Source of the DNA: Tubulanus polymorphus
Taxonomy: Eukaryota; Animalia; Nemertea
Assembly: GCF_964204645.1 (NCBI RefSeq)
Contig: NC_134031.1
Span: 20,963,910 to 21,027,909 of the forward strand
DNA: 64,000 bases
Direction of reading: 5' to 3'
Part shown: positions 1-49,510 of the stretch, one piece after another
How positions within the stretch are numbered: the stretch's first letter is position 1
Layout: each line of letters starts with the position of its first letter
The notes under the pieces: model-generated
What the model was told of the DNA's origin: nothing
Seen by the model: only the letters and a program-made list of their open reading frames with translations
Database searches by the model: none
Made by a program: the position numbers and the translations under genes

Positions 1-3000
1 AAGTTCTGCTCTTGTGGCGGCAAATTCCATTTCTTGTTCACACAATGAATCTTCTACATTATCGAGAGATTCTTGTAATCTTGAAATTTCGGTATCCTTT
101 AAACGAAGAGCTTCATCTTTCTGCTGTTTCCTTGTTTCCGATTCAGCCTGAAGATCAGATAAACTTTTTCTTGACTCAATCAACTGTTCATTCAGTTCGT
201 CACAATTTTTCTGCTGTTGATGAAGTTCTGAATTGATATCGTCAATTTTCTCGTGCAACGATACATTTTCACTGCGTATTCCATCATTCAATTCAGATAG
301 TTCAATAAATTTACATCTGGTGTCTGACAATTCCTTTTCATTTGCTTCAAACATTTGTTGTATTTTGTTTAGTTCATTTTTCAATTCCTTGTTTCCAGAT
401 TCCAATTCTTGCATCTGCATTTCCCGAGTCTCGTTAACAGTCTTTTGATTTTGCATCAACTGATTTATCTTCTCCTCTAAAAGTTGGTTATGCTGCTCAG
501 ATTCTAAACTCTTCTCAGAAATTTCATTATATTTCTCAGACAAATCATTTCTCTCGACAATGATTGCTTCGTAGTCTGCTTGAAGAGAAAATTTCTGCTG
601 AACCAGAGTTTCGTGCTGGTCCATCTGATTTTTCAATTTTTCTGTCTTCTCAGTGATTTGCTGAGCTAAATCCTCGAGTTTCGTTTGCATTTTGACCAAG
701 TTTTCTGATTGCTGACCAATTTCTGATTGTTGCGACTGGATTCGAGCTTCCTTGCTGGCAATAACTTCGTCTCTCTGCCCAATGATTTCTTCCAGCGAAG
801 TAGTTTTACTAGAAAATTGGTCAACCTGATAAGAAGAAACAGTATCAATCTGCTATTCAGCCTTATATTTTCATAAACCAAGATGACTACCAGTCAACCA
901 CCTTGAATGACATTATAACCTTAATTCAAATACAGATCCTAAATGTCATTTAACATTTTCATGAGAAAGTTCAATGCTCAACATCAAATACAGTTATAGG
1001 CCAAAAACTAAACATTAGGAATCAAAGACCACAGGTCAGCCATCTTGAATGCAATTACTTTCAAATTAACTAGGGTTTATTGTATGCCACCACATCCATC
1101 TAACTAACATGAAAATCTTAAGGATTGTATCTCAACTGGTTTTAAGTGATTGTGGTAACACAAACTTCATGCGGACACAGTACAGTGAGGTCATAATTGA
1201 CAAGCTGCCATTGACAACAATAGATAATATTCACCTGATCAGATAGACCTGCTAGTTTTCCAGAAAGTTCCACAGTTTGTTCCAGTAAATCTGAACTCTT
1301 TTGTTGCAATGAATTGCGCTCTCTTTCCACCTCAGTTAAAGATCCTGAAAAATAAATGTCATTGTTGAAAGAAACAGATCAATCCAGCAGTTCAATGAGT
1401 CTTTACACTTTTTCTCGTAGATGAAGGGCTTCTAGTGATTTTCATTGTCAGTCAGAAACTCACCTCGTAAATTAGCTTCAATCTGTTCATGTTGAGATTT
1501 TGTTGTTTTCAATTCTTCCTCAAACTGCATCAACTTGGCAGATTTTTCTTCTAATTCAGATTCATATTGAACCTTACCGTTTACGAGTTCCCTACAATCA
1601 ATAGAATATTGAATGAATGAAAGAATTTACAATTCAGATTCAGTTGTCGTAATTGTTCATTAAACATAACTCTTTATTTTCCAAAAAGGAGAAGTTTTAC
1701 TGAAAAACTTACTGATGAACTGCTTGAAGTGTCGTATGAGTTTCTTGCAAATGCTGCAATTCCGAAGCATTGCGAGTAGATTTTTCCACTTCAGCTTCCA
1801 CCTGAGCTGTCAAAGTTTGAATTTCTTGTTCACTCTTTTCCATCGATTCTTTCAATTCAGTGACTTCTTGCTGCAGTTTCATCAACTCGATGTTTTTATT
1901 TTGAACTGTCTGCTCAGAGTTTCCGAGCTGCACATCTAATTCATTCTTCAACTTCTCCATTTTACCGAGTTTTGTGTCGGCGTCTTCGAGTTTCTCTTGA
2001 AGATTGAGAATTTCGTTATTCTTTTCGTTGACCATACGATCGTAATTTTCTGTTTTGCCTTTCATCTGATCGACCGTAACCTGTAAATCTTCTGAACGTT
2101 TACTCAAAGTGAAATTATCGTCCATCAATCCGGAACTTTCGATTTCTTTCATTTGCAGCTCGTTTCTAACGGCGATAACGTTTCGTTCACTCTCCTCGTA
2201 TTTCAACTGTAATTCGTCGAAATCTTTTTGCATTTTTGCGATCTTCGAATCGACGTTCGTCTTTTCCGTTTGTATTTCGGCGACTTCTTTTTTCAGTTTA
2301 TCAACATTCGCGTTCAAATCTTTCGATTGTTTTTCGAACGTTTTGCGCAAGGTATCGATTTCTTGTTCCATTTGTTGTTTCTTTGCTTTGAGTTCTTCGT
2401 TGTACTGAGTCATTTTATCGATACGTGATTTTGTGTCACCGAGTTCTTTTTCCATACGAGTACAATCTCGCTGTCGTTCACAAAGATCTTTCGCCACAGT
2501 ATCCTATAAGAGATAATATATCGTAGTGTAAATGTTAGTATATCAATAAGTCATTATCCAGTTTGAATTCAAACACATGGTGATAACAACTTTACCTTAG
2601 ATTTTTTCAGCTCATCCGAGTTTCTTTGCATTTCTTGTTGCTGGCTCTGCATCTGTAAGATGAGAAATTCAAAACGTTGACAGTCAAAGTCTGTGAATTC
2701 CTCAGTTCTTCATTCATTTTATCAACAAGAAACATCCGAAATAATGACTGGGACAAAATATTTACCTTGTAGTTTGCCTGCTCAAGTTGCGCTTTGAGCT
2801 TAGTTATTTCTTCTGAGTGTTTGGTGATAGACTGATCTTTAGTGACGAGCATTTTCTCAGTGCGATCAAAATCCAGTTGCACTTCTTTCACACGGTCGTT
2901 CAGTTTTTGTATATCTTTATCGCGTGCTTGGATTCGCAATTCCAAATTAGCGTTACCCGTTTTCAGATCTACGATGAATAAACAGTTATCGTGGGTTAAA

Positions 3001-5620
3001 CTTAATGTAAAAGATTCAGACTATCTTGGTATTTCCAATGGTAAAAATACACAAACTACCGACATTTATTTTATTAAAATTGAAAGTATATCTTGAGCAT
3101 GTTTTTTATGTTGTCATTCTTAAAAGAAAACAGAACAAATTGTATTAAAAGTCAAGGAATTTAAGTAGTGCGAATGGTCATCAATCTAATTCATTGAACT
3201 AGAAATTTGATTTTGAGCATTCTTCTCGATTTTAAAAGAGCTACTCCTCTATAATTATAGCATGAACAGTTAGAGTTTGATTGATACCAAATTTTCTTAC
3301 GTTCAACTTCTTTCTTGAGCTGGTTGACAATTTTGTTATCATCTGCGCTAGGTTGAGGTAGCGCTGAAGCTACTGGTGTCGAGTTTGTCGTCACATTGTT
3401 GTAACCGCTGAATACATTCGCTTGTTGTTCTTGAGTTGTCGGTGGCGGCGGTTGTTTCATGTGTCTCGACGTCATTAACGATTGATCGTTATTCATACAC
3501 GGTGGCGGCTCCGGTGAATCACGCGCAAATGGGCAACTGCTACGACTATTACTCTATAAATAAATACTTGATTCTAGAACATTGATTGGGTAGGGTAGAA
3601 TTTTGACTCAAATTCCAACATGAAATGAGTAGACATTCAAGTCTCTCCTACATTCTTCTAATCGTTGATTGCCCGGGAACCTAAATCACGGGACATGTTT
3701 CATTGAATACAAACTAAGAAACTTCCTTTACTAAACATAGCCTAAATTATTAAAGGAGGTAACTAAGAAATTCTATATAAGCGCATTAGGGATTCAAAAG
3801 TAGGATATATCTAATCTTGCTACTTACATTTTTACGATAATTGTTATAATTGGTCGGTGGTGCTGGAACACCGAGTCCGAATGGGTCATGTTGTCTGGTA
3901 ACTGGGGCAGCTGATTCAAAAGACACTAGAGGACCTTCAATGGCTGTCGGTCCATTTTGATACTTATTTGAGTCGGTCGTAAATTCAGCAAGCTTAAGAA
4001 AAATTATATCAAGTTACGTAAAACCAGTGTTAGATCGAAGCCACAATTATGATTTATTCACAACAAAATGAACCACACTATACGCGATCTGATTGACTCA
4101 TTTTGGACAAAAACATCAAGAAATATTACCTTTAACTGTAGATTGTGAAGATTCTGTTGAAGCTTTTGTTGTTCCATCATCGCTTCGTCTCTGGATGTTT
4201 CAGCAGATGACAACTTTGACTTCAAATCGGCTATCAGTTGATTGTTCGTTTCCTTCAAATTGTAAATCAAGACATTAGCAATTTATGTATAGTAGTTAAA
4301 CACATGGACATTCTTATGCCATACCCAGCAAGGCGCAATGTTTTGAAATGATATCATCAAATGCCATGAATCTTATATCCCCAGAGCCGGCCCATTTGAT
4401 ACACAACAAGTCATGACCTTCACATAGTTTGACTTGAGATGTGGCTGAATGACTTTTGTCTACCAATGCCACAAAACGATTAAGCTTGAAATCTTTTGAA
4501 ACAATATAATCAAAACAACATACAAAATCACTGTCCGAAGAGCTTCCATGCCCGCTGCGTGATCGTGATCGCTGAACGTTGTTTCCCATACGTCGTAAGT
4601 GATCATTTTCACTGTTCAGTTTCTCATAGCGACGATCTAAATCATGTACTTCTTGTTGCAGACGATCGAGTTCCGTTTGAAGTTTTCCGGTCTGAAATAA
4701 CAACAATAGCAATAGAAAACATGTACATGACTATAAAATTGAACAAGAGTTTTTACTAATTTGCCGTGTCTATATTCCTGTGCACATGATGTAGACATTT
4801 ACAGAAGATTTACCAGTCAATCTGAATTTGTATTTTTTTTTATAAACTACCCCTTATTCGCTAGAAGACCCCACAGTTTGTGATGCTCTGGTTCTCTACT
4901 CATTATCTAAATATATCTACTAAAATCATTTATGAAAACTTGACTCATACGAAACTGCTTATGATTCATCGATATTTTTTTTTGCTTAACCCAACCTTGG
5001 ATTGAAAATAAATTCATGCGCTCTGGAGATACAAGGCCTAGGTAACAGTGTCTCGCAGAAATAAAATAAACTGTAGCTATAAGTTATTTAAATCTTTAGG
5101 CTGTAGCCATATAACTGAACTTGGATTGGAGATTATTCTCATAGTGCATACTTTATTTGTTTCGTGATCTAATTGAGTTTTCGCTTGGTTCAGTTGACCG
5201 AGAATGCTTGTTATATACGTTTCCTTGTTGCTTAATTCATGTTGGAATTTCTGAGATTTCTTATTCAACTCTTCGCACTGATCCATTAGCGACTGATTCT
5301 CACGTTGTATGATTCCTTTCTGCGATCGTTCTTCTTCTATTTTCCTTTTTTGATTCTCCATCGCCTAAACGAAAGACATTTTATTTCACTTAAATACAAG
5401 TAGATTGATACTAATTTTAGTCCTCCTTTATCTATAGGCTACTGTTAGATGTAATTGGATTGTAACATCAATCTCAACTGACCTGCTCCAGAGTATCCAA
5501 GCGACATTGTTTCATTTGACATTCTTTCTTGAACCTTTCCACTTGTCCCTCGATTTTTTCCACCTCTTGCAACGCTCTGTACGGCAAGCCATCTTTCCAT
5601 TCGTTACGAGCCCAACTCAT
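1..5620 (-). CDS. CENPF: Centromere protein F-like coiled-coil protein, 5' part (continues off the left edge). Coding exons: 5620-5483, 5364-5152, 4691-4524, 4252-4130, 3992-3828, 3553-3301, 2968-2766, 2652-2596, 2503-1713, 1591-1464, 1344-1235, 825-<1
   Basis: The N-terminus MSWARNEWKDGLPYRALQEVEKIEGQVERFKKECQMKQCRLDTLEQ|AMENQKRKIEEERSQKGIIQRENQSLMDQCEELNK matches the CENP-F N-terminal domain (MSWALEEWKEGLPTRALQKI...). All listed exons have GT-AG boundaries in consistent phase. Downstream exons are long heptad-rich coiled coil. Confidence 0.88.
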
Positions 5621-7635: not shown

Positions 7636-10289
7636 ATGGCACAGTATGCTACTAGCAAACAAAAACAGATGAAAAATTTTAGGCCTAACAGTATTGTAGT
7701 ATCATTGTAAGTATTGTATGCTTTGGGGGGATACCCTCACACTGACTGTGGAACTGGACTGTTGGGGACGGATACTTATTGGAGGGCCAGGCATACATAG
7801 GCCTGTGGTGAACCCACCTGACTCAGGACCACAAGCATATAAACTGATCTTGCCCATATGGTAAAAACACCCAACATGTTTACACTGTTTGAGGCCTAGT
7901 TATTAGTTCTACCCTTGCTCATATTAACCCTCCATGTATCTTGTCACTGCTGTTATTTCGATGATATCTATAAGTACAGTAAGAACAGTCTTGGGCTTTG
8001 CTGCAGAAATATCTTTAAAACCAGATATTGATAATATTTAATTTCTGGTAATTTCAGGCGGATGCTTCCGGACGACGCGAATCCTGCCGGGAATGTTCAT
8101 GGCGGGAACATCCTGAAAATGATTGAAGAAGCCGGTTACATAATCACCACGCGATATTGTAATAAAATGATGGCGAAAGATGCGACAGCGGATGATATAT
8201 CGCAACTAGTTCCCGTACAAACGGCTCTGGTGCGAGTCGAGAGGATGGATTTTCTCGAGCCGATGTATATAGGAGAAGTTGCTGAGGCTTCAGCTGAAAT
8301 AACCTACACAGCCGCTCATTCGCTGGAAGTGATGGTCAAAGTCTGGGCTGAAAATATCGAAAAAGGTTTTTGTCGGATTTTATGAATCTTTGTGCAAGTT
8401 TTCATGGATATTTGATCAATCAGCTTGTAAATGGCCAGATTAGATTATCACAATGGGATACTAGTACTCACCAGATGGTGCAACGAAACACTGGGTCATT
8501 TGTAGTGAAAATCAGTTCATTTTCAATGAAATTTAAACTTGAATTTTAGGCTTCCAAATCTGAATATTAGCATTGCCGGTATCCCATTGTGGAGTTGTAG
8601 CCCATAATATCGTGATCTAATTTTCATCAGGTACAAAGCGTTTGACAAATGAGGCCCACCTGTGGTACGTTCCGTGCGATACAGAATGCGGTAAGGTTGC
8701 TACGGTACCGAGAATGTCCTACGATACTCCGAATGCTGAAGCCGAAGGTAGAAAACGTTATCTACAACAGAAAGAAGAGCGGGTTCTCGCTCCAGAGAGT
8801 TTACTTTCTCCATCTCCACCTCATTCAGGAGATATTTCTAACAATAGTCCTTGTAAGTAGGCCATGACCTAATAGCATTGATAACATTTGGATTGATCAG
8901 TATCCGCCATCAGTATCGGTATTGTTTCCAAACATTTCATAAAATTCTTTTCCGTCATTTCTTTTTTAGTTACATTTCCTGAACGTTACACAGTACGTTA
9001 TTCGCAGACGACGTTGTCACACCTAGTAACGCCCTCTGACTGTACGATGTATGGTAATGTAGCAGGCGGTGTACTGATGAAACTGATGGATAACTGCGCA
9101 GGCGTCGTCGCCGCAAAACATTGTCATAGTAACGTAGTGACAGCTTGCGTCGATACAATCGATTTTAAAAAAAGTGCTCGCCTTTGTAAGTTTTATTTTT
9201 TCATCCATCTCTTCAATGTTTTTTTAGACCGAACAGAATTCTACGGTCGGTCCCATTTTATCTCATCCTCCCTCGGCAGGGACCTGATGATTGGTACCAC
9301 AGTGTTTGGTTCCTGGTCTCATGAATTGAGAAATATCAGAATTGAAAATGATCAGGAAACCAAAGAGTTTTTTAAGCCAATACTTTCAAATTTGGGATAA
9401 GAAAGTTTATCTTTAATTACAATGATTTTCGAAAGTGCTAACCGATTTAGACAACCGATTATTTAACCTTGTCCATTATACTTAACACTGATTTTTTTCT
9501 AAATTCACATTTTTCAGCAAGTTTGCTCACAATTCAGGGCAGGGCAGTATTCACGAGTTCTCGAACTATAGAAGTTGAATTAATCGTCGACGCGGAAACA
9601 ATGGAAAGTTTCATGACCCAAAGTAAAATCCGTGCCGTTCAGGCTTATTATACGTTTGTCTCGTTAGATAAAACTCGAAAAACGCTTCCGATTGAACCTT
9701 TAAATGTGAGTGGTTCTTACATTGTCAAGTATTCAACCAGTTCCACAGTTGTGAGTTAAGATTTGACTCCGAGTTAAAACATCGAAAATGAACTAACTTT
9801 AACTGATTCGGAGTTAACTCTAACTCACAACTGTGGAACTGGGTCCTAAACTGTTCATATTGACGTAAGATGAACCTCAAAAATTCCATATTGAAGAGTT
9901 TTGTTTAACAGCTCGTTTACCAACTGACTGCAATGAGTTCATAGTCAATGATGAATGACAGTAGTAATTATTCATTGAAGTACTTTCCTTAGGGATGACT
10001 GCCGAATTCCCCCAATAAAATTATGTTGGAAATATCGTGCTGCTTTATTAGGGAATCCAATATACTTCCTGATCCATTTCAAAGGGCCCTAGAAATTGTA
10101 GACCATTGATAATAATACGGACCATTCCTTCAGCGATATTCGATGATCTGTTAATCTTTTCATTTTCTCTTTATTTAGTTAATTTCTGATGGTGAGAAAA
10201 AACGGTTTGAGGAACGTCGTCTACGATATGAAAATAGAAAAGCTAATCGCGCAAAACGTAAACAGTTAGCAGAGCAAAGTCAATTATAA
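7636..10289 (+). CDS. ACOT7: Cytosolic acyl-CoA thioester hydrolase (double hotdog fold). Exons: 7636(or 7528)-7706, 8058-8365, 8631-8852, 8970-9185, 9518-9705, 10179-10289
   Basis: Spliced translation ...SIVVSLRMLPDDANPAGNVHGGNILKMIEEAG...TKRLTNEAHLWYVP...SQTTLSHLVTPSDCTMYGNVAGGVLMKLMDNCAG...EKKRFEERRLRY matches ACOT7. The catalytic Asn (PDDAN) and Asp (LMD) are retained and all splice phases are consistent. The start codon is uncertain (7636 has ATCATGG context). Confidence 0.92.
9737..9847. mobile_element. Short MITE in the last ACOT7 intron; related copies at ~45783-45892 and ~57944-58010
   Basis: Terminal inverted repeat CCAGTTCCACAGTTGTGAGTTA...TAACTCACAACTGTGGAACTGG. Similar ends recur elsewhere in the window. 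Confidence 0.7.
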
Positions 10290-12431: not shown

Positions 12432-15400
12432 TTAATGGCATCCACAAGATTTGACGCTCATGTTGCGGTATTTTTTCAAGACGACGTTCGAATACTCGTC
12501 GAAATAAAGCACAGATATCGCTTTCAGTTTGGTTGGCGCGCAGCACGGCTTCGGTACGTTTAACGGTTTCATCGAGTGTAGAAGAGTCTGTAACAGAAGA
12601 CGATACGGCAGACGATGAAATCCACAGGGAACGATGCAAAATTATGGTGGCTGAATTAGGCTTAACTGAAATATATTTTGTTTACGTAAAATCTAATTTT
12701 AGGCAATTTGCAAAAATTGTTAAGACACTACATTCAACAATTTAAAAGAAAGTATCTATTTTCTCTATAGGCCTATAATCCCTTGTAGGCCTATAATCCC
12801 TTGTTTTGTACAATCAGTCCATCTCTCACATTTGTTATTTGTGTTTTCGTAGAAAAATGAGAAAATATACAATCATCAAAATATCGTTTTTACACTTTTA
12901 ATGTTATATACTTCGTTTTTGTGCGACAGCAAATGAAAGTTTGTCGAACAACGCGTCTATGGAAACGTTCTGATGGGAAACATAAATTAGTTGCCCGTTT
13001 CTCGAGTGCAAATTGAAAGTTTCGTCGAGCTTTCAGACAACACTTTCTATTATACTGGCTGGCCTGCGTACGTACCTGAATTATAGCGTGGTTAGTGGCG
13101 TTCATGTGCGAGTTCAGAGGAAATGAACATTCACCGTAACAGTAATACGCCGGATATCCTTCAGGGGCTATTATCCAATCCTACATAAATTAATTGATGC
13201 AATGAATGACGTTCACTTCATGTCGATTTCAGACTCAAGAAAAGATTTTCAAACATTACCTGCCATTTGAGATCTTTAAAACTAACGTATAAAGTTCGCT
13301 TTTGGCAAATCTGATGATTATATCGGTTGTCTACAAAACAAAAATTTCGTTTGGTAAACATGTGGCCCTGTGCAGTATTTTCTTTTTTTTTTAACGTTTA
13401 TTTTCTATCTATGTCTCAGCGCGAGAAAACCAATAATTCTTTTTCCAGAAATCTAGAAAACGTGATATAATCCTTCAACAGCTTCGTTATTAGCGATGAT
13501 TGTGGAAATTAAAAATAAAAAACGTTTGTGGAGAAAATGTGATTAAATGCGCGCTTACATGTCATTCGTCCCCAGTTCCAACCACCGGCGTCGTTGTACG
13601 TGACGTCAGCAGGGTTTTGTCGCCGGCGAGCGGCTCTAGTTCGACGAACGTGAAGCTCTTTAACAACTTTGAATGAACCCACCATAAAGGCTTGTCTATC
13701 TTTGTGTCCTCTCAAACCGACAATTCCAACATCGTTCAGGTCTAATTCCTCACCAGACTCGCTCAGTATTTTCATCAACAGTCCCAGATTTTCAAGAGGG
13801 TGTATCATCCAGTACAGACCTGCGCTGGTGATGTTCAAATCGAGCCAACCTTCTTCGTCTGCCCTGAATGTTTTATTTGCTTCCAGAACTAATGGTTCCG
13901 CCCTGAAATACATATACACCGGTATTTTTCAACTAAAACTAAATTCAACTGATTTTGATTCTACAATAAACCGTCGATAAATGAATTATCGATAAATTCA
14001 TTACGGAAACTTTTTGGACTTCATCTTTCTCGTTATGTCACGATGATTCTCGCTCAGACAAACTAAGAGTTTATGAGATAAAAAGAATTAAAGTCTAAGA
14101 ACTTTGGAGAAAGATCTTGGAATCACGGTGAAAACTGAACCACAAATATAAAATTTCGATGAGGTCCACTTCTATTGGATGTGCTTGACCACGTCTTTCA
14201 ATAATGTTTATAGTTTTTGTCTTACTTCGGGTAGTGATTTTCATTTTGAAGCCGGTAAATCTGTATCGTAAAATTGCTTCCGATATATCGATGATGGCGC
14301 CGTTTGAAAAGTCGTAATTCCGCATCGGTTAAAGTTTCGTCCATTGGCACGTCCGCGAAATCGAAGTAGAACGAATTGTCTCTCCTGTGTCGAAGATGTT
14401 CCTGTTTTTTCGCTGGAAATTGCAAGGCAGTGGCATAGGTTTAGACATGGTATAGGTTTAGAAAGATAAGTCACAATATAAGATATAAAAAAGAAACATT
14501 TTTTGGGTACGTTATATAAACAGTAGTGAGAATGAAACAATGATGATATCGTGATTTATTTATCTGTGGATTTTTCTATGACAGAAGACTTTGTAAGACA
14601 GCGATCTTAGTCCTTATCGAGCTGCCGCGATACAATAGTAACAATCATATTGAAAGGTAAAACTTTAATTCAGAATTCGTTTTAAATTGAATAGAAACCA
14701 CATTGTGTAATGGGCCTTGTGTTGAATTATGGTGGCATAAGGAGAATTCACCTCGATTGATTTATCTCTATGTTAGTGGTGGGATGATTGGAGTTGAATT
14801 ATAGACGTTTTCTATATAGATCTTATCTGAAGACGGAATGGCGTCTTGTTAGTGTTCCGAATACAATAAGCCAGTGATATACGGGTGGTCTTATGTACGC
14901 TCAAAACGCTATTTCTTTCTGCGAGGAATATGGTTCAAATGCATAAATTCCCAAAGTATAGCGAGGCGCTTTAGTACCATTCGATATTGTTAATAGTTGT
15001 AATAAGAACCAAAATATTGCAAGGCCAAACCGAATCTAGGTTTTTTAATACAGTTTTACTTTTTTTTTATTTTTGAAAAAACTTTGTGTTTTGTTTAAAA
15101 GACTAAGAATATATATATATATTAAAAGCATAAAACCTAGTTTATCTTCTATACCTTTATTAATGAAACTCATGACCAGATCAGCGTGGTCCAATTCCTC
15201 CATGGCCCTCGCACTGGTGTTGAACATCCTCATTAGATGAAGTTGCGAATAGTATTTTTGATCACCTTCATCGCTTTCTGTCGATTTGTACAAATCCAAC
15301 ATAAACTGCGGGGCGGAATAATCGCGTCTGAACCAGCCTGGTTTCGGTCGCTGTTTCAAACCGAGTAAACTCAAGATCTCGTGTTGCAGTAAACTGCGTA

Positions 15401-15542
15401 CTTTCGTCTTCATGCGTTTAATAGCTACCGTGTGTCCTATTCCACCGGCGAGAACGTTGTCGGCAAAAATTCCGCTGAAACCATCGCAAATCGTTAGAAA
15501 ACAGGCGAAAATTAGACAAATCTGCAACACGTTCGACGCCAT
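12432..15542 (-). CDS. BMP5-8: BMP5-8 / gbb (60A) class TGF-beta family ligand, complete. Exons: 15542-15155, 14412-14226, 13902-13559, 13330-13260, 13180-13076, 12587-12432
   Basis: Signal peptide [21 protein letters not shown], then a prodomain with [29 protein letters not shown] and EEGWL, and furin site RRTR. The mature domain [102 protein letters not shown] has all 7 cysteines. Confidence 0.95.
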
Positions 15543-18500
15543 TGTGGCTGGAAATATTGTGGTAGAATTATACACGCGCAGCCTATAGTCCAGTTCGAGC
15601 ACCGAGCGTCAAATATCAATATATAATCAGTGATTCAAAGTAAATCGTTTACAGTATCTCGGTATAATACGGTATGAAAAGAGATTTCAAAACGAGTCAA
15701 AACGTTCGAATAGGCATTAGAGCCAGCAATACACTTTATATCCGAAAACGTTTGTATCAATAGTTGAACAAGTAAAAGGAATATCTCGACGCGGTCAAAA
15801 CATGTGTTCGGCTGATGGAAAAAATATCATCGATCGCTGCCAATAATCTATCGAATTAACGACGAATCTTTGATCTGTTATCGCTCTATATCATCCTTGG
15901 ATGAAAATTCCACGCATAGCTTTTACATTAGTTCCTGATATCTGTTGCTCCACTCCTCCTAGAAGTGAATTCAAATAACTTCAGTCGTTTGAATCTTAGT
16001 TCCGTTAATATAATACACCGTACAACTGCCTTTTTCCAGTTACTTTCTACTAATCCGCTTTTGAGAGTTTTTATCGAAGTTCTTCACCGGTTATATTCGT
16101 AAATTCGGAGCTCAATCGTTTGGCTTCACGTCTCGTACCTGTCGGCCATGTTTGTTTAGGCTGAACCAGGTAATTCGTAGTTTGTGCGCCAATAAAGCGA
16201 TCCTAAAGAGAACAGTAGACAGATACACGCTGTTTGCGCGATATTATTTCCATTACTATATGTCTCTCAGCATGGTTTCGAAATCTGTATCATATTCGAA
16301 AAGATTAAAAGAATGATAAGAAAGCCTCACTTTTCCCCGTAGAAATGAAGCGATTCTACGACGCACCAAAACAATAGAAACCAATGATAAGTGACAGAGC
16401 ATCATAACAAAGATGAATGATTGAAGATTAAAGTTAGCAAAATTCTTTGAAGTAGGTACGTAGGCCTAGGCATTCTCTGAATCGACGGCATTGAAATGGT
16501 TTTGGTTTGCCTCGTGAACGAATCGGTAAAAATGCCAGCCTGTTCGTGTTGATAGTGAGATAATTGACTAAAGCACTTAAGAAGCTATTATAAACGTAAA
16601 CTAAACTTAAAGGCTTTGCTTTCAAGATCAAGGGAGAAAAATGGCGTAGACGATGATGATAATTGATGAGTTTCTGTTTTAGATAGAAATTATTTTCTCT
16701 AAGTCAATAAAAGACTGGCGGATTCTTCACTGCGCGGGAATAGTAATATATCTTAAACAGTTGAAAATATGATCAGATCACGAAATATCAGAAAAATAAA
16801 TCAGGCTGCCCTGAGGTGGTGGGGAAACGGGTTCCTTATACAATACACCCTATAATTACCCTAGATTGGAACTCTAAATAGTCCCGCTATCGGAATATGC
16901 CACAATGAAATAATGTGTTCTCGTAAGGAGTTTCTATATACCATTCCGCAGAAAGCAATAATGAAACTAATAGCGTGAATCCTAAAGATGAATTTTTGGT
17001 GATTTTCATCGACTGTAATTTGCCTTCCATGTTTGAAATCTGCGTCTGAATTTAACAAAAGGCACCATCTTGATATATATTCTACATGTTTGGCTCGGTA
17101 TATCTATATATACATATACATATACACGCTTAATGTACACCGTTTTTAGGTTATAGGAGTGTCTAGGGTTTAAAGATTGAATTCGAGTGTTCATCAGACC
17201 TGTTAGGTTTATGGGGCGGGCCTAATCTTCTAGGGGAAGGTTCAATTTTGAGAAAGTGGGACTGCCCCTGTCTGGAAACATGAACTGGGTGTGAATGACA
17301 CGATCCTGGCTCTCCCCTCCGCCATTATTCAATATTTATAGAATATTCTGGGGCCCGAAATAGCGGTACTCTTTTTAAGGTGACACGTGTTCCCTAGCCA
17401 CCCCATCGCTTGCCCCCTTGTCGTGTATTTCCGACGTTACGGAGTTTCTCTAAAGCTAGAATGATTTAACAGATGTTGTTCAATCTTTGAAAATGAGGAA
17501 GAGAAAACCGTGTTGAGGTTTGACTGATGAGTCAACTCGTGAGGTTTACCTCTCGGCGCTGCTGGTGCTGGTGGTTTAATCAGTTTTGACAAGTTAATGT
17601 TCGCGCTCTTTAGCTGTTTATGTATTACTTTATCTGGCAGGGGCTTTTAGAGGAGCACCTGCTCTAACGCTCACTCACTGTCAGACGTCTATTACGTGTA
17701 GGTACGTAATATTACGCGAAATGGATAATTGAATCATCACAGAATTCCCAAAACAAATACACAAAGGCGGTCAATACAAAAACATCTTCCATCAACCAGG
17801 CTGATTACTGAAGAAAACCTGGTCGGTGCGTCCGATATTTCCACTATTTTTCTCGTCTTTTGAGGAAGGATATAATCAATCTTTCTATTCGGATAGATGG
17901 ATTGATCTAGGCTTATTCATAGATACATATAAACAGATATTTTGAGATATTTCTCGTCCGAGTCACGCGGACAAACCATAGATAGGATTTCCATGATAAA
18001 GCCTTCAGTCTGATTACTGAACGGCTCAGAATCTCTCAGATACCGACTGCAGAAATATCGCTTAGTTCGATCGACCCACTCTAAATGACTTTATCCATAC
18101 TCGGACAAGCTGAAAATAAAGCGCGAGATGTATGGCCCCATGTGAACATAAAATTAACGTAACGTGTTAGTTTAAGTAATTATGAGCATTTTTTTAATTA
18201 TTTCATTCGTGTGACAAAGATTCTCCAGCAAGTAAAAACAAGCGCTCACACTCACAGCAAAGTAAAGACTATAACCACAGTAACACACCAGTTCTTTTGG
18301 TGTGAATACTATATCAAAATTTAACAGTAATTAAATCAGTGTCTAATCATTATATTAAAATATCTAAGGAATTTAACATCTCAAATTTCATCACACGTAG
18401 AACACTACGGAAGATTTATTTCGACGGGTTGAGAGCTAAATTTCATATTCCCAAAAAATAAATTTGACTCTTGACTTTTTAAACTGTTGTCAAATTGTTT

Positions 18501-40009: not shown

Positions 40010-43000
40010 TCAAGTATTTTGATGATGGCCGTGTGTTTGAGGACTCGGACTACGTCCTAAGGATGACAAGGATGAGCGCTGCGATGTGCCGTAGTTCAAC
40101 GAGGAAAGTGCTTGAGCTCTTTGTACAGCCGCGATAGCTGCGGCCGGGATAGGTGGGCTTATTGGAGGAAAACAACGATCTGACAGACGTGATATAGGTG
40201 GCAGCCCGGTATGAGTCCCAACCATTGACGACAACATATTCTGTGATAGTGGACGTTGGTTCGTTGATGATATAGGACTCGGTAGTGGCCCCAATCCGTC
40301 TTGCTGACTATGCGTTGTTCTCAATGACAATGGCGCCATCACATTTGGCGTTGCACACCTATCATCGCTGTGACCCCCGTCGTGCATCGCCTCGCGCATT
40401 TCTCTCATATTAGCTTCACGCATCTCGCGCATGTTCACATGATCTCGTTGCATATCCCGCATCATATCACGCATGCTCATATCTCGCATACTCATATCTC
40501 TCATATTCATATCTCTCATATTCATATCGCGCATGCTAGCCTCGCGCATGCTGGCCTCGCGCATATTCGCCTCACGGTAATTCGCCTCAGCTCGTAGACT
40601 TGCTTCGCGCATGTTTTCACGAACGACTTCACGCATGCTCTCACGTAGAGTGTCCCTTATTACGTCCATGCTCGGTGTAGCCATCGGATTATGTGGATTC
40701 GTTAGATTTAAACCACCAGTAGGTGATAGTTGATGGCTAGGTGTACTTGGTCCGCTCGACATGTGGTTTGTTGGGCTATTCTGACCAGGTAATGGTGTAG
40801 CTGTTGTTGGGCTCATGGTGGGAGTACTGTTAGCTGATGTTTTGGTTGGCGAGTTGGAATGTTGAGACAAATGAGAGTGAAGCTGAAAATAAATGATCAA
40901 ACAATATATTTTGTCAATCAACAAAATAGCAGAAAACCTCAACTCTATCGATCACTGCGTAACAATATTCCGTAAAACAATCCCATCCCTTTAACTGAAA
41001 CCGTAAAACAAAATGCTAGGCCTCATGCAACATATACCAATACTTTAAGACAAATACCATAATTAATTTATGCTGGTGCAAATATATCATTTTTTAACGA
41101 GCTAGAATTAGCAGATATAAAACTGATATCTAGTATTATTTGGATCTAACCAGCTCGCACGCCAGATAAACACTCAAGACTGACAACGCTGAAAGTTGGG
41201 CACCCAAAATCTGTTAGATCAGTAGGTGGTATATGCTTGTGTACAGAGGCCAAGCCCTCTTTAATCCAGACAACAGGAAAACTCATATTTCCACACATTT
41301 CAAGGGATCAAAAATATTTGATTATCTACGCCGTAAAATCTTTGTAATTTGCAAATTTTGATGCACCAGTGGCCCTCGCTGATCTGTTCATGCGATGCAA
41401 AACAGACATTGTTTTGAATAAATATTTGATGAAATTGCCAATATCGATGGCCTGAAATGACCTTGATAACCTTGGGGCTCGTTCCACAAACCTTAATTAA
41501 AGCTTAACTTTAATCACTTTTATGCTCCCTTAAAAGTTCTGGGAATGGATTTAATTCCACTTTGTGAAAGAAGCCACAGGGAAGATCATAAATTAGATTT
41601 TTTTGCAATTCCATCAAACGGGAAAGTTAGTGAACTTAATAATTGCATCTTGAACATTTTTCGCACGCAAGATCAGCTAGGCCAACTGTTACAAATCAGC
41701 AAATCAGATTAAAGAGGGTTTCAGTGAACACCTTCTCATCTGGACGGCTTACCCTTGAAATATGTTTGTCCAGACTAGACTCGGTGACAAATCCGCGTTG
41801 ACATACCGTGCAGTAGAAACTCTTCCGAGACCCCTTGGCTTTTGTGTTGTCATGGTTTCGCTGATGATGCTGTAAATTGGAAAGCTGTGCGAATGCTTTG
41901 TTGCAGTCCGGTATATTACATTTATACGGTTTTTCACCTGAAATCAAATTGAGGTGAAAATGAACGTTAATAAATTATTGTTAAAGCAAAGTGGTTGTTC
42001 TGATACACTCTCCCGGTGTAAAAACATGGCAACATTTTCAACCCGGTGTAAAAACATGGCAACAGTTTCAACCCGGTGTAAAAACATGGCAACATTTTCA
42101 ACCCGGTGTAAAAACATGGCAACAGTTTCAACCCGGTGTAAAAACATGGCAACATTTTCAACCCGGTGGAAAAACATGGCAACATTTTCAACCCAGTGGA
42201 AAAACATGGCAACATATTCAAGAGCATTTCTATTCAAACTCAGACAAAAAGTTTGAATAAAAATGTTCGCGAGGAAGTGAAGGCTTCGTGAGGAGAAATA
42301 TTTTGTGCCGGTAAAAGGCCTGTAAAAATGAAAATGCTAATTTCAGAAGTTGTATATGTGTCAAGATAGACAGAAGAAGCCGCTTAAAAGTTCACTTGTC
42401 GCGACGGGTAAAAAAAAAATATCAGACAAATAAAAGACGGATTTATAAGTTCTGAGAACTGTCTCTCAAAGTACCAGCATTCAATCTAAACTTAGCTTTA
42501 AAAATTAGGGAATCATCATCATTATTTGACTGTATAACTGGGTGGCAGTATGACTGGGTGGCAGTATGACTGGGTGGCAGTATGACTGGGTGGCAGTATG
42601 ACTGGGTGGCAGTATGACTGCAAGGGGATTTGATGGCCTCAAGTGATATTGAGTACAAAAACATGGGAAAAATGAAGTGAAATTTAGCTTTCGTATTGTA
42701 ACCAGCCTGAAGGAAGATGATGAAACTGTTTTCTTAGGAAGAAAATTCACATCAAAATCTTCAGAACTAGTAGGAACAGTTGTATTACTGAATGTCCAAT
42801 TTCAATCTCAATAGGCCTAAGCCATTATGTGTTACTGCCAGCCTTTTGTGAATGTTTCAACTTTCTCCGCGTAAATTTCTATTTGTCTAACTAAAATGTC
42901 AAATCAATAATTATTTTTCAGCTTTATTAGTTTTTCTGTAGCATTCCAACAGTATTGTCCATTTCATCGATAAAAAAACTTAAAAGATTCATTCAAACTA

Positions 43001-46000
43001 TTCATCTGTCTGGTTTTCAGTACAAGGACTAGGTGAACTTCACAATGTGCAGTTCTATATACAAACACCAGACGACACTTGATCCGTATTTTCATAGACT
43101 GGAAAAAATCGATATGAATTGAGTAAAATGTGAAATATCTGATAGAACTAAGTGAAATTACGAATCATACGTATCAAAACAGTTGTCATTTTCAGAATTT
43201 TCTCCACAGGTAGTTTTAACTAGTGCCGGTTCACAAAACATTTTCAGCTGTATATTTCTAGGCCAAATGAGTCATAACGATGTCATCTCCTCTATTCATC
43301 CCCTTTTATTTATTTTTTCAGATTTTCTAAATTCCTCAATAATAAATTTCATTTTTGGTTTCCAGAAAATAATGAAGCAACGCAGACAAAATCATGACAT
43401 ATTTGAAACAAAATCGATCAAAGCATCTTCAAAATTTCTCATTGAAAACTTTGAAAATGTGTGCTGATTTTGCTGAATAACAATGGCCGCCGGTCAGCCA
43501 TCTTGATCGTGATGGGGCCAATATTTTGGCAAAAGATGCATCTATGGTAGATACGCACATCAATCAAATAGCACGACCATAAATTGAAAATTTCTGTCGA
43601 CAAATGGACGGACAATGGACAAAAACTGTCAAACGCAATAGCCCGCTGGGACAGGTGGGCACAAGACATGTTTTACAGCGCAGAACTTGTGTGAGAAGAT
43701 TGGCCTTTTCTCTAGCATAGATGATATACATACCATCCGGGATATTAACTCCATCGAACATTTCAGCACCAGGTGGCGTTGGATCATTTTTATCGTGGTT
43801 GCGTTGATGATGCTGTAAACTCGCCAGTTGAGCGAACGACTTGTTACAATATGGCATTGAACATTTATACGGTTTTTCACCTGAAAATAGATTTTTGAAA
43901 AAAAAATTGAATGCAAAGGAATAGAATCGCAATAAACAATGAAAATACCCAAAATCAGCTTTAAATGAAAATCAAAATGAAATCAAAATCGTCACTGGTC
44001 GACTTTTTTAGTTTTTGATAATTTTTTCTTATGTCGGTTTTGAAGAAACTATCACACCCTATAGCCACACCAGGCAGTTCCCTATAGCCACACCAGGCAG
44101 TTCCCTATAGCCACACCAGGCAGTTCCCTATAGCCACACCAGGCAGTTCCAATCACATGGTAATAGTATAAGCCAATTTCATGTTCGGTCCTCAATGAAA
44201 GTTTCCTTACGGTTTCACAAGCAACAATCACCGACCAACAAATGTAGTGAAACTATCAAATCAAACGATACAGAAACATAAAGGATGAAAATTGATTCAA
44301 TTAATCAAGACACATAGAAAAATAGAATAACGTTTTTAAATTGCACATGACACATACACAAACAACTATATAAATATATCTATCTGAAAATATGACTAAA
44401 GGATCCAGAATAAAAGTGTTAGGGGGCAGTTTTGGTTTTGAATGTGAAGGAAATTTGACTAACAACTAAGTTTGGATTTAGGTATGGAGCGCCACTGTGG
44501 TTTACAAACACACACACATATATAATATACAGTTGAAAGTAGTTTGAATCTACGCTACAGAATGGAAATAAAGAAGCGCAAAATATCGACAATAAAAAAA
44601 CAAGCACAGCTAAAAAGATGGTTGTTTTTGAATGGAAGGGTGGTTTTTGAATTGAAAAGCCTGCACATACCTGTGTGCAGCCTGGTATGGCGCTGCAGGT
44701 GTGAGAGCTGGATGAAGCCTTTTGGACAGAAGGAGCACTGGTATTTACGTTCCCCTGCAGCAAGAGCAGAGACCAAGAGTACATTTACACATGCCACATT
44801 TATTGAAATGATCTACTCTCTAATATCATGTCATTTCGTTCTTTTAATCTCGAATGAATCAATTGTTTTATGGTAGGTTATGGTGGTAAACTAAGGTGTG
44901 TTAGGATATAAATATAAAGTCATGAAAAAATGGCTGCCAACTTGGTCAACTTGATTTTCAAACTTAAATATTCTGCCAACCCCGACTGGAGATATCTTCA
45001 TTTGCTCCGGGAGACCCACGTATATGATAAAACTTTCATATATTTTCCGCGAGTATCTTTTTTTGAATACTCGATGAAATCTGGTTTTTATGGGACTGAT
45101 TCGATACCGATCCCCGAACAGATATTTTTATCATTCTATTCAAGTATTTCTCTTCAAGCTTGTTTTCCTGAGTTCTAATTAATGTATGTGGAATGCAGTT
45201 TTTACACGTGCCTCTGAAGGTCAGCTTTCACCGTTAAGGAGTATGTAAAAACCAATTATGACTTATGAACTGCGATGTCTCAACGATGAACGAGACATCT
45301 CACAGTTGGTCGAGAACATACGGGATAATAGAAAAAAGTATGGTTCTTTTAAAAACTGAAATAAGAAAAAAGGGAGCTCAGTAAAAACTTATCAAAAACC
45401 GAAGTCAATTTTAATAATGAGATTAGTATCGGGATTAGGAGAATGTACTCTTGGTTGACTACTCTTGCGTTTAAATCGATCACTTTGTTTTTCAAATTCA
45501 AATCAAATAACAAGTCATCAGTAAACAATCCCTCACACACCTTGACACCGGTTTAAACCATGGATTCAAATACATACACATCGCTAAGTTTTACCCATTT
45601 TAACAAATAGTTGGTAATTGCGAGAAATGCAAAGTATCGCAATTTGAATCCATTTTTCAAGAAAGTTTGTATCCATTTCTAACCCTTACACGGAGAAGTT
45701 CAGATTTTCATCGGCACAAGTCGGGACTGGAGTGAATGAAACAGTTCAGTCCCAGTTGTACTATTCCCCGCTTAATCTGATTCCGGTTCGACAGTTGTGA
45801 GTTAGATTTAAGTCTCTGAATTGAAATGAGTTAATTTTCTATTCGTTAACTCGGAGTCTGATCTGAATTCATAACCGTAGAACTGGGTCCTGATCTGTTT
45901 GTACTTATGCAGCAAGAATGACCATTTCATTTGCATATTTATCAATTTGAATGTAATATGTACATAATGATTAAAGTAACAATTTAAGTAGATGGCTTGG

Positions 46001-46985
46001 TGTCATGTTGCCAATGATACATGATATGTTAATTTTTGATTGCCAGTTAATTGACGCATATGATTTTAATTTCAAAATAAAATAGAATTTCAAATCTGGT
46101 GTAAATATCTCTGAATATAATACAACTATAGTTTTATAATCGTTAATTAGAAAAATGATCAGGGGAGGGTAGGCAGGGTTCTGCGTAAATAGGAGTAATC
46201 CTTGTACAACTGGGAGATGACGTCAGTATCGTAGACTTGGTCGATGAATAAAACAGTAGCGGTTAGAAATAAATTCACACTCGTGGTTTTGTTTGTCACC
46301 ATCACCTACCAACATTTAAATCATATAAACATGTATTAAAAATAACTTGAATGAGTATTGCCAGAATTAGACCTTTTTGGATCATTCCATACAGTTTTAC
46401 GAAGGGTTCAACTCGCGATAAGTGGTTCTTAAAACACAAATAAAACACTTCCTCCGATAAGCCTGATTGGTATTTCCAAATTCAAATTCAAATTTCAACA
46501 CGGTTTCATACGAAGACTGTTTTGGAAACATCCCCGAGATTCAGTACTCATTCAAGTAAAGATCATCTTATCAGAACAGCACAAACACTGCCCCCTAGTG
46601 GAGTATCCATACCCCTAATTCTTGATGGTGCTTACAAACCTATATATGTAGACAGGCATCGGTTATTAACTATGCACCATCCTCAACATAATTGTTTTTA
46701 TCAAGTTCAGCCGATGATGTCATAGATACAAATCTGCCCCCTGGTGGCGCAGTTAGACATACCTGTATGGATACGAGTGTGTTGTTGAAGATGAGATATC
46801 TGTTTGAAGGCTTTCTCGCAGTATTTGCACTGATATTTCCGGATGCCTGTATGCACGAGCGAATGCTGATGCAGCTGCGATGGACTCGCAAATGATTTAT
46901 AGCAATTAGGACACGGATGAGCCTTATCTTGGATGCCGTGTGTTTCTTTTCCGTGGTTGAAAACGTCGGATTTGTTTTCAAATTT
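40010..46985 (-). CDS. C2H2 zinc-finger transcription factor related to rotund/squeeze/ZNF384/ZNF362/jim, 3' part. Exons: A 46985-46763, B 44754-44671, C 43880-43734, D 41937-41753, terminal 40882-40010. 5' exons not located and probably beyond 64000
   Basis: A: KFENKSDVFNHGKETHGIQDKAHPCPNCYKSFASPSQLHQHSLVHTGIRKYQCKYCEKAFKQISHLQQHTRIHTG. B: ERKYQCSFCPKGFIQLSHLQRHTRLHTG. C: EKPYKCSMPYCNKSFAQLASLQHHQRNH. D: EKPYKCNIPDCNKAFAQLSNLQHHQRNH...FYCTVCQRGFVTESSLDKHISR|LH, the last finger completed across the splice. QLSHLQQH/QLSNLQ helices are typical of the rotund/ZNF384 group; exact orthology is uncertain. Confidence 0.88.
42012..42220. repeat. Minisatellite, 7 x 30 bp (CCCGGTGTAAAAACATGGCAACA[T/G]TTTCAA)
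   Basis: Units start every 30 bp from 42012. The first five alternate between T and G variants (60-bp higher-order period). Confidence 0.95.
42537..42620. repeat. Minisatellite, 5 x 16 bp (ACTGGGTGGCAGTATG)
   Basis: Direct reading. Confidence 0.95.
44057..44150. repeat. Minisatellite, 4 x 23 bp (CCCTATAGCCACACCAGGCAGTT)
   Basis: Direct reading. Confidence 0.95.
45783..45892. mobile_element. Diverged copy of the MITE seen at 9737-9847
   Basis: CCGGTTCGACAGTTGTGAGTTAG...ATAACCGTAGAACTGGGTCCT. Confidence 0.6.
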
Positions 46986-48558
46986 CTGTAAATATTGAAA
47001 AAACGCTCATGAATGAACACAACAGCATTTGAATTAGGTATTATCAAACACTTTTTTAGAAATGTTTTATGTCGGTGGTAAAAGCCTTTTCCCAAAAAAT
47101 AAAATAGGCAACTGAAACAACCAGCTTCAGTCTGCACCAGACATCAAATTCACATTTAGAGAAACTGGTTACAAATGGTGTCGATATAAAACTCAAGTCA
47201 TGCGAATTAATTGAACTCTGTATTTCTAAATTCTTTATGGCTTCTTTTGCCTTGATATTATTCAGCTTCAACATTCGAAATATTGCTTCACTTCTGAACG
47301 CCTCTTTCTATATCTGAGTATATCTGAATATTTATAGACGTCAACGATTGAATTTGGGATGAAATCAACTTTACGCTTTTAGCACCTAGCGTATTACTGT
47401 CGCCTGGTTACAAAGTGTATTCCAATTACAAACACGTGAAACATCTTCAAATGAAAACGATGTTAGAATTTCCAGATAATCGTTAGAAATCCGAGTAGAT
47501 CAAAAGATTCCACGTGTTTGTATTAATTACATTAATCAATAATGAGAAGCAAATGAAAAACTGGCCCACATTATACTTGGTTACATGTCCAAAGTATCTA
47601 TGTGCTTACAGGGCTATAGATTCTGTGTTAACCCCGATTGAGGCTCAAATTTGTTGGCCAGTTGTATAATGCAGGTATAATCCCAGTTGTACAAAGATTT
47701 CCCCAGTTGTAGATTTCTCTAAACACCTCAAATGATAAAATAGGTAAATGTGATAATAATGCGACACCAGAATTATACAGGAATTGTTGTTACAGTGGAC
47801 AGTGAATAGATACGCCTAGTGCAAAAAGCATGAAACAAAATCAACGGAAATGTTTTTCTGGTTTGTTTCGTGATGAGCGTGTGTGTGAGTTGCTCCAGAA
47901 ACCTTGCTTCTCTCGCTAGAATTGCTGGTATCACAGAAATGTTTCAGTACGTTTCTTGTTTTGAAATACGTGACTGCTGCGAACTAAATGCTAAAACAAA
48001 CACAAACTATGTTTCTCGTTCGCAGAAGTGTTTCTTTCAGCGGTTCAATAAATATGAAGGACTTTAACATAGGTCTAGTCAACTAGTCTAGTCATTAGAT
48101 CCAGCATTTTGTACAACTGAGAAATGGACCACTTGGACCTTAAACATAGGAGCTAAAATTTGTTGAACTGGTTACTGGCAGCACAACTATCATAGAGAGC
48201 TCATACTGGAGTTGAGGCATTTGATGCTCATTAGATTTGATTTTTGCTGATTAACGAATTATTTCAATGAGAACACTGAATAAGCAGATATCATTATAAC
48301 TATTTGATCAGAATTTAAGCCGGGATCATTGATAGAAGTGGTCAGAATTATCAAAGAAATATCAGCTCATTTTCTCTGCAACTTTAATGCCTTTAATTTC
48401 AATATTTCTTCGAAATGGTTCAGAAATCTAGGAGCGAGATTTTCTTGATAATAATCGAGATTTAAAAATGAATAAAAAGTCGCTTAGCAACAGAAACAGA
48501 CGGGCGAAATACAGTTGAAGATTTCACTAATCTTTCTAGAATTTTCACCCACACTATC

Positions 48559-49438: not shown

Positions 49439-49510
49439 AGATTTTGTGTCTTTCTTGTGATGTTCCCGTCCTTTATGCTTCCAATGCGGGCACTCGGAAT
49501 AGGGGACAGT
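49439..49510 (-). CDS. Candidate 72-nt phase-0 cassette exon of the zinc-finger gene (TVPYSECPHWKHKGREHHKKDTKS)
   Basis: Acceptor TTTTTTCGCTCACCCTTTCGTCGTAG and donor TCT|GTAAGA. Length is 3n and the exon is open in the phase required by exon A. Confidence 0.4.

What the first reader, a model, noticed from the sequence alone, without database searches (positions are those of the whole stretch)
41753..46985. Zinc-finger array built from duplicated, frame-symmetric cassette exons that differ at DNA-contact residues
Seen: exon B (84 nt) and exon C (147 nt) are both phase 1-1 and 3n long, so either can be skipped in frame. B resembles the last finger of exon A (RKYQC..C.K.F.Q.SHLQ.HTR.HTG). C is a duplicate of the start of exon D: the acceptor plus the first 20 exon nt are identical (TTTCAG GTGAAAAACCGTATAAATGT). 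The recognition-helix differences include canonical contact positions (-1,2,3,6): A3 is Q,S,H,Q versus B Q,S,H,R, and D1 is Q,S,N,H versus C Q,A,S,H. Established: these positions set C2H2 base preference, and rotund/ZNF384-type fingers bind A-rich sites. Inference: one gene could produce A-D, A-B-D, A-C-D and A-B-C-D isoforms with different finger numbers and binding sites, a splicing-programmed specificity switch created by exon duplication.
Basis: partly seen in the sequence, partly recalled or inferred. Interest (0 to 1): 0.8.

Follow-up and report, generated by a model that had tools for sequence, protein, structure and literature searches.

The report
Ribbon-worm zinc-finger gene with optional finger exons
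Part of a ribbon-worm ZNF384-like transcription-factor gene whose zinc fingers sit on separate in-frame exons: RNA shows one extra finger exon in use, another skipped, and splicing removing or altering two more fingers, a known way of varying a DNA-binding array.

Summary
Their lengths, phases, splice sites, the identical 26-nt acceptor and exon start of C and D, and the contact residues all check out.

One boundary is wrong. The RNA-like contigs end exon D at an internal GTATGT donor (41807), not at 41753.

The only spliced evidence comes from one run of unrecorded type (X3). It shows A-C, C-D and D(short)-last-exon joints.
- C is therefore an expressed exon.
- B is skipped.
- No A-B, B-C, B-D or A-D joint was seen.

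B is not decaying. Its synonymous sites against finger A3 are saturated while pN is 0.24. It has 55% GC inside 35% GC introns. The same 84-nt phase 1-1 "GERKY" finger exon occurs 6 times in one snail orthologue and at least 9 times in another. The Lineus orthologue has neither B nor C.

The exon anatomy is confirmed. The four-isoform specificity switch is only partly supported. Finger-number variation by splicing is already known for vertebrate ZNF384, so I class this as a new member of a known kind.

The parts
46763..46985 (-). Exon A: second half of finger 1, then fingers 2 and 3 (223 nt, phase 0 to 1)
   Evidence: Its 3' end is joined to exon C, and its 5' end to two different upstream exons, in X3 contigs.
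44671..44754 (-). Exon B: an 84-nt, phase 1-1, single finger of the F3 type (GERKY...QLSHLQRH). Intact, but skipped in the available RNA.
   Evidence: The A-to-C joint skips it, and it is covered only by a contig colinear with the genome, 44657-44876. pS 0.95 and pN 0.24 against A3. GC 0.55 against 0.35 in the introns. The same exon type is found in Candidula and Bulinus.
43734..43880 (-). Exon C: 147 nt, phase 1-1. A diverged copy of the C-x4-C finger 4 plus a 20-residue spacer. Expressed.
   Evidence: Joints 43878>46761 and 41935>43732, each with the cut shifted by 2, place it between A and D in X3 contigs. pS 0.90 and pN 0.10 against D1. Absent from the Lineus and Candidula loci.
41807..41937 (-). 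Exon D as used in the RNA contig (131 nt): finger 4 and the first Cys of finger 5. It ends at an internal GTATGT donor.
   Evidence: Contig record 17 leaves the genome at 41807. Its next 30 letters match 40853-40882 uniquely.
41753..41806 (-). Optional 54-nt in-frame extension of exon D: the body of finger 5 (VCQRGFVTESSLDKHISR), bounded by a second donor, GTAAGC.
   Evidence: No X3 contig covers it. It is 17/18 identical to Lineus, with about 10 synonymous changes by my reading, so it is conserved as coding sequence.
40010..40882 (-). Last coding exon: it begins LH (the final His of finger 5 in the long form), continues with a low-complexity C-terminus, and ends at the stop at 40010-40012.
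   Evidence: 67% identity to Lineus 'zinc finger protein 384-like'.
49439..49510 (-). 72-nt phase 0-0 exon (TVPYSECPHWKHKGREHHKKDTKS) that joins exon A in one X3 contig. It does not supply the Cys pair of finger 1.
   Evidence: Loose end at 46985, mapped, with splice sites visible. No Pfam match.
43861..43886 (-). First copy of the 26-nt string (acceptor TTTCAG plus the first 20 exon bases), at exon C
41918..41943 (-). Second, identical copy of the 26-nt string, at exon D
   Evidence: No similarity extends into the introns.

Best explanation
The stretch is the middle of the zinc-finger-coding part of a spiralian paralogue of the ZNF384/rotund/LIN-29 family, in a ribbon worm. Every linker-to-linker unit here is a separate phase-1 exon, so fingers can be added or dropped without breaking the frame.

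Shown:
- Exon C, a diverged copy of finger 4 followed by a 20-residue spacer, is spliced between A and D.
- Exon B is skipped in that same spliced form.
- An internal donor in exon D removes finger 5.
- Exon A receives two different upstream exons, and only one of them completes finger 1.

Inferred:
- B is a conditionally used cassette. It has stayed an intact finger with good splice sites since an old duplication. It is also the same kind of 84-nt exon that forms arrays of 6 to 9 copies in snail orthologues.
- Splice choice sets the number and spacing of the fingers.
- Because the contact residues of B nearly equal those of finger 3, including it most likely lengthens or strengthens binding to A-rich DNA rather than switching the target.
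- C puts a finger with altered contacts (Q,A,S,H) into the canonical position next to finger 3 and moves finger 4 behind a long, non-canonical linker.
For: - Exon anatomy and Pfam scores.
- Spliced contigs of run X3: joint 43878>46761, a 372-nt contig that is exactly A+C; joint 41935>43732, which is C+D; exit at 41807 continuing at 40882; and two upstream partners of A, mapped to 49439-49468 and to an exon 25.7 kb upstream that ends ..YQCKMCDQ|GT.
- No copy of the A|C junction exists in the genome, so the contigs do not come from a retrocopy.
- Old duplicates that stayed coding: C against D1 has pS 0.90 and pN 0.10; B against A3 has pS 0.95 and pN 0.24. At most 16 non-synonymous differences over 65 sites has P about 2e-4 under a neutral expectation of 0.47.
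- B has GC 0.55 and GC3 0.67 inside introns of 0.35 GC.
- Comparative loci: Lineus has A and D 196 bp apart with no B or C. Candidula has six and Bulinus at least nine 84-nt AG/GT-flanked GERKY finger exons with the same boundaries and phase as B, and their gene models use only subsets of them.
- In Candidula the best match to B is cassette 1 (74%), not that gene's own finger 3 (65%).
- Human ZNF384 has an isoform with six C2H2 motifs and binds homopolymeric dA.dT (PMC8589989).
Against: - No contig joins B to anything. B is seen only in a contig colinear with the genome, so its use is inferred from conservation alone.
- All RNA evidence comes from contigs of one run, at most two samples and one study. 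The run type is not on record. Contigs drop rare forms and cannot show absence or proportions.
- Skipping of C and use of the long form of D were not observed.
- B and C are missing from the only other nemertean locus available (Lineus), so neither is needed for the gene's basic function.
- Isoforms X1 and X2 of the Gigantopelta orthologue differ only at the N-terminus.
- DNA-binding consequences are untested.
Confidence: 0.6

Rival explanations
1. Exon B is a relic pseudo-exon. It was once a finger exon, as in the snail arrays, but it is no longer spliced in this lineage. Only C was added to the working array.
For: - No joint involving B was found.
- The A+C contig runs through the end of A without a break.
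- B lies only in a contig colinear with the genome.
- Lineus has lost or never had B.
Against: - B has an intact frame, all zinc ligands, the conserved Phe and Leu, and linkers at both ends (TGERKY and HTG).
- It has AG and GTATGT splice sites.
- pN is 0.24 with saturated pS.
- Its GC content is 20 points above the surrounding intron.

A long-dead exon in a 35% GC intron should have lost these features. A recent death cannot be excluded.
Confidence: 0.27
2. B and C are independent cassettes giving A-D, A-B-D, A-C-D and A-B-C-D, and each isoform has a different DNA target.
For: - Both exons are 3n long and phase 1-1.
- One of the four forms, A-C-D, is seen.
- A-D is the form annotated in Lineus.
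- The contact residues of C differ from those of D1 at positions 2 and 3.
Against: - Three of the four forms are unobserved.
- B's contacts are nearly the same as those of A3 and of every snail cassette. This points to a change in footprint length rather than in target.
Confidence: 0.15
3. The spliced contigs are an artefact. They come from a retrocopy, from another locus or organism, or from misassembly, so they say nothing about splicing here.
For: The type of runs X2-X4 is not on record. Contigs can be chimeric.
Against: - Three joints fall exactly on predicted AG/GT boundaries with no other differing letters.
- The junction 40-mer is absent from the 268-Mb assembly and from the DNA run X1.
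- The loose ends map uniquely to exons of the same strand and frame.
Confidence: 0.03

Closest known systems
Vertebrate ZNF384 (CIZ/NMP4) isoforms with different numbers of C2H2 fingers
   Same: It is the same protein family. Exon A aligns at 52-61% to fish ZNF384b. The nearest named protein is 'zinc finger protein 384-like'. The F2-F3 fingers are duplicated in the fish and Gigantopelta proteins. A human isoform with six C2H2 motifs is in use, and the protein binds homopolymeric dA.dT (PMC8589989). That the longest human form has eight fingers, and that the forms arise by alternative splicing, is from my memory and was not checked here.
   Different: Here the extra units are a single F3-type finger (B) and a copy of the C-x4-C finger 4 with a spacer (C). 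No second finger 4 is present in any relative examined. The gene is a spiralian paralogue rather than the direct ZNF384 counterpart, which lies next door.
Ikaros family (IKZF1, IKZF2/Helios) finger-exon skipping
   Same: In-frame skipping of exons that encode single C2H2 fingers changes DNA binding. The existence of Helios splice variants with altered function is cited from PMC5040427, as listed.
   Different: It is an unrelated family. The Ikaros isoforms act as dominant negatives through a dimerisation domain, and nothing of that kind is seen here.
Drosophila lola / Broad-Complex / tramtrack: common 5' exons joined to alternative zinc-finger 3' modules
   Same: Exon X, which ends in the Cys pair of finger 1, is followed by two downstream modules. 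Each starts at the homologous point of finger 1 in the same phase. Splicing of X to the distal module is seen in RNA.
   Different: There are only two modules. No BTB domain was looked for. The shared exon carries half a finger. Use of the proximal module was not checked with RNA.
Dscam-type mutually exclusive duplicated exons
   Same: C and D are duplicated exons with identical acceptor regions.
   Different: C and D occur together in one spliced contig. No complementary docking copy of the 26-mer exists in the window. They are therefore not mutually exclusive.

Membership tests
ZNF384 / rotund / LIN-29 family of C2H2 factors | A tandem array of C2H2 fingers | tested here: met
   Pfam zf-C2H2 scores are above the gathering cut-off on exons A, B, C and D.
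ZNF384 / rotund / LIN-29 family of C2H2 factors | The signature fingers in order: ..QLSHLQQH.. followed by a C-x4-C finger ..AF.QLSNLQ.H.., colinear with a named family member | tested here: met
   The order appears in the translations. Exon A aligns to fish ZNF384b. The closest named protein is 'zinc finger protein 384-like' from Lineus.
ZNF384 / rotund / LIN-29 family of C2H2 factors | Being the direct (one-to-one) counterpart of ZNF384/rotund | tested here: inconclusive
   A neighbouring single-exon module, about 23 kb upstream on the same strand, matches ZNF384b colinearly, including its last finger (56% over 147 aa). The A-D module lacks that finger. It shares its unusual finger 2 (..QLHQHSLVH) with the Lineus and snail proteins. 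It looks like a spiralian paralogue. No tree was built.
ZNF384 / rotund / LIN-29 family of C2H2 factors | Binding to A-rich / homopolymeric dA.dT DNA | not testable with these tools
   This is known for human ZNF384 (PMC8589989).
Alternatively spliced cassette exon | A frame-preserving length with usable splice sites | tested here: met
   B is 84 nt and C is 147 nt, both phase 1-1, with AG acceptors and GTATGT donors.
Alternatively spliced cassette exon | Both the included and the skipped form seen in RNA | tested here: not met
   For B only skipping was seen, and for C only inclusion. The data are contigs from one run, which drop rare forms, so the missing forms are not excluded.
Mutually exclusive duplicated exons | The two copies never occur in the same transcript | tested here: not met
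   A contig carries the C|D junction.

The most novel reading that the evidence does not exclude
The spiralian ZNF384-like paralogue may act as a 'finger-number dial'. It would carry an ancient, expandable row of interchangeable single-finger exons (none in Lineus, one in this worm, 6 to 9 in snails) that are used combinatorially. In this worm that would be combined with two further choices. One is a lineage-specific second finger 4. The other is a choice between two whole finger modules that share an upstream exon carrying half of finger 1. One locus would then produce many DNA-binding arrays of graded length.
Probability: 0.2. Interest if true: 0.65.

Novelty: new member of a known kind. Interest (0 to 1): 0.4.

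Why it matters
If B-type exons are used in a regulated way, this gene family would be a simple natural case of how the length of a zinc-finger array is tuned by splicing and by exon duplication. The copy number ranges from 0 to at least 9 across the ribbon worms and snails examined. The family's vertebrate member, ZNF384, is a leukaemia fusion partner and a bone regulator, and is already known to have isoforms with different finger numbers. As it stands, the finding is a well-supported gene-structure annotation with partial evidence for alternative splicing. It is not a new principle.

Tried and rejected
- The word search with exon A alone found nothing, because the length window excludes full proteins.
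- The search with the Lineus finger region was swamped by poly-zinc-finger proteins. Only four relatives, picked out by their higher identity, were usable.
- I did not run the large representative search. It is costly, and its summed scores would favour poly-finger proteins in the same way.
- The Gigantopelta and fish ZNF384b loci are not on record.
- Gigantopelta isoforms X1 and X2 differ only at the N-terminus, so they give no support for finger splicing there.
- Docking-site idea: no complementary copy of the 26-mer exists in the window. No similarity between the C and D regions extends beyond the exon.
- Retrocopy idea: rejected.
- Six literature searches found no open paper that lists the CIZ/Nmp4 isoforms. 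Only PMC8589989 mentions 'isoform 2, six C2H2 motifs'.
- The identity of the first six codons of C and D (6/6, against 7/17 same-residue codons elsewhere) is only marginally unusual, about 0.005 to 0.05. Local gene conversion or a splicing constraint remains an open reading.
Full report
**Anatomy**

The gene runs on the minus strand. From the sequence and a script, the exons are:
- Exon A: 46763-46985 (223 nt, phase 0 to 1).
- Exon B: 44671-44754 (84 nt, phase 1-1).
- Exon C: 43734-43880 (147 nt, phase 1-1).

All four are flanked by AG and GT.

- A encodes the second half of one finger and then two complete fingers.
- B encodes one finger, GERKYQCSFCPKGFIQLSHLQRHTRLHT.
- C encodes a C-x4-C finger followed by a 20-residue tail.
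- D encodes the C-x4-C finger and the start of a last finger.

Each exon scores above Pfam's zf-C2H2 cut-off. The string TTTCAG plus 20 exon bases is identical at C and D and occurs nowhere else in the window. No similarity continues into the introns.

**RNA evidence**

No run is on record as RNA. However, run X3, from the same study as the DNA run X1, behaves as RNA when laid on 41400-47399.
- A 372-nt contig is exactly exon A joined to exon C. The joint is 43878>46761 with ends CT..AC, which lands on the predicted boundaries when the cut is shifted by 2.
- A 1359-nt contig starts with 30 nt of C, runs through D from 41937 to 41807, and then leaves the genome.
- The next 30 letters of that contig match 40853-40882 uniquely. 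This is the start of the large last-exon reading frame.

In this RNA, then, D ends at ACG|GTATGT (41807). The 54 nt that encode the body of the last finger are spliced out in frame.

Exon B is covered only by a contig colinear with the genome (44657-44876).

The DNA run shows none of these joints, and the A|C junction 40-mer is absent from the 268-Mb assembly. A retrocopy is therefore excluded.

These are contigs from one run. They show that a form is present. They cannot show that a form is absent, or give proportions.

**The 5' side of exon A**

Two X3 contigs reach the acceptor of A with different upstream sequence.
- One maps to a 72-nt phase 0-0 exon at 49439-49510.
- The other maps outside the window, 25.7 kb upstream, to an exon ending ..KRSYQCKMCDQ|GTATGT.

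The distant exon, joined to the KFENKSDVFNHGKETH that opens exon A, makes a complete C-x2-C-x12-H-x4-H finger 1. The 72-nt exon does not. This is direct evidence of alternative splicing at finger 1.

**Relatives**

The last exon finds one named relative, 'zinc finger protein 384-like' of the ribbon worm Lineus longissimus. Earlier notes of this scan call the present genome Tubulanus polymorphus. I treat that as a lead only, though it fits a nemertean nearest relative.

In the Lineus locus the exons matching A and D are 196 bp apart. Nothing resembling a separate B or C lies within 23 kb. The Lineus gene model is A, then long D, then the last exon.

The snail orthologues differ.
- The Candidula locus holds six exons, and the Bulinus locus at least nine, between the counterparts of A and D.
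- Each is exactly 84 nt, AG/GT-flanked and phase 1-1.
- Each encodes GERKY/F-x-C..C..F.Q..HL..H..-HT.
- The deposited gene models use only some of them.

In Candidula, B matches the first of these cassettes (74%) better than it matches that gene's own finger 3 (65%). B therefore belongs to an exon class shared between two phyla. No relative has a second C-x4-C finger, so C is specific to this worm's lineage.

**Selection**

Between C and D1, synonymous differences are saturated (pS 0.90) while pN is 0.10. Between B and A3, pS is 0.95 and pN 0.24.

If B had drifted neutrally since so old a duplication, about half of its non-synonymous sites should differ. Sixteen or fewer differences out of 65 sites has P about 2e-4 under that expectation.

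B also has 55% GC, with GC3 of 0.67, inside introns of 35% GC. B has therefore been kept as coding sequence for most of its history. Whether it is still used is not shown.

The 54-nt finger-5 segment is 17/18 identical in protein to Lineus, with about ten synonymous differences by my reading. The long form of D must therefore be functional too, and the two donors are best read as alternatives. In Lineus the site of the internal donor reads ACC GTG TGC, which is a poor donor.

**The wider locus**

Between the distant exon X and the window lies a single large exon with a strong acceptor, on the same strand and about 1.7 kb downstream of X. It begins MFESKSDLLVHSHQVH, which is the homologous second half of finger 1 in the same phase. 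It encodes five more fingers, a C-terminus and a stop. It aligns colinearly with fish ZNF384b, including the last finger.

The locus thus carries two tandem finger modules behind one exon that holds half a finger. Splicing of that exon to the distal module, the one in this finding, is seen in RNA. Use of the proximal module was not tested.

**Mechanism**

Shown:
- C is included.
- B is skipped.
- Finger 5 can be removed.
- Two different upstream exons join A.

Inferred:
- Splice choice sets the number and spacing of fingers.
- B, A3 and all the snail cassettes carry almost the same contact residues (Q, S/T, H, Q/K/R). The family's best-studied member binds homopolymeric dA.dT (PMC8589989). Adding B should therefore lengthen or strengthen binding to an A-rich tract rather than change the target.
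- C takes the canonical TGEKP-linked place next to finger 3, with contacts Q,A,S,H. It pushes finger 4 behind a 20-residue linker, which could change spacing or sub-site use.

**Comparison and verdict**

Variation in finger number by splicing is already known in this family and in others such as Ikaros. I therefore class this as a new member of a known kind.

C and D are not mutually exclusive, because they occur in one contig.

The 'specificity switch' remains untested.

Exons were searched separately by reference. 

Noticed in passing
L006 871-1914 (minus) and L001 1498-1773 (minus); about 69.9-70.9 kb and 72.6 kb in window-equivalent coordinates, beyond the window end: A second, canonical ZNF384/rotund-type finger module lies on one large terminal exon, 1.7 kb downstream of exon X. 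It starts at the same point of finger 1, in the same phase, as exon A. The layout is either two alternative 3' finger modules sharing an exon that carries half a finger, or two tandem paralogues with read-through splicing. Only the X-to-A join is seen in RNA.
   Followed up: partly
window 49439-49510 (minus): A 72-nt phase 0-0 exon joins exon A in one RNA contig. It has no family match, and what lies upstream of it in the transcript is unknown. If it sits between X and A it would split finger 1.
   Followed up: partly
L003 14464-38177 and L010 6443-15932: The snail orthologues carry six (Candidula) and at least nine (Bulinus) tandem 84-nt single-finger exons. The deposited gene models include only three or four of them, so the models are incomplete or the exons are optional.
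   Followed up: partly
window 42012-42221, 42532-42620, 44057-44150: The introns between D, C and B hold perfect or near-perfect minisatellites with periods of 30, 16 and 23 nt and 4 to 7 copies. DNA contigs break at them.
   Followed up: no
window 43441-43632 and 43911: Runs X2 and X4 replace 190 nt of the C-D intron with 37 other letters. An X3 contig departs from the genome 31 nt upstream of exon C, with no splice signal at that point. These are probably indel or transposon polymorphisms between individuals.
   Followed up: no
window 13512-15602 (minus); 8062-9397 (plus); 1712-4712 (minus): Other genes are present in the window. There are two exons of a TGF-beta/BMP-type propeptide, a thioesterase-superfamily (4HBT) gene with two such domains, and a coiled-coil protein gene.
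   Followed up: partly
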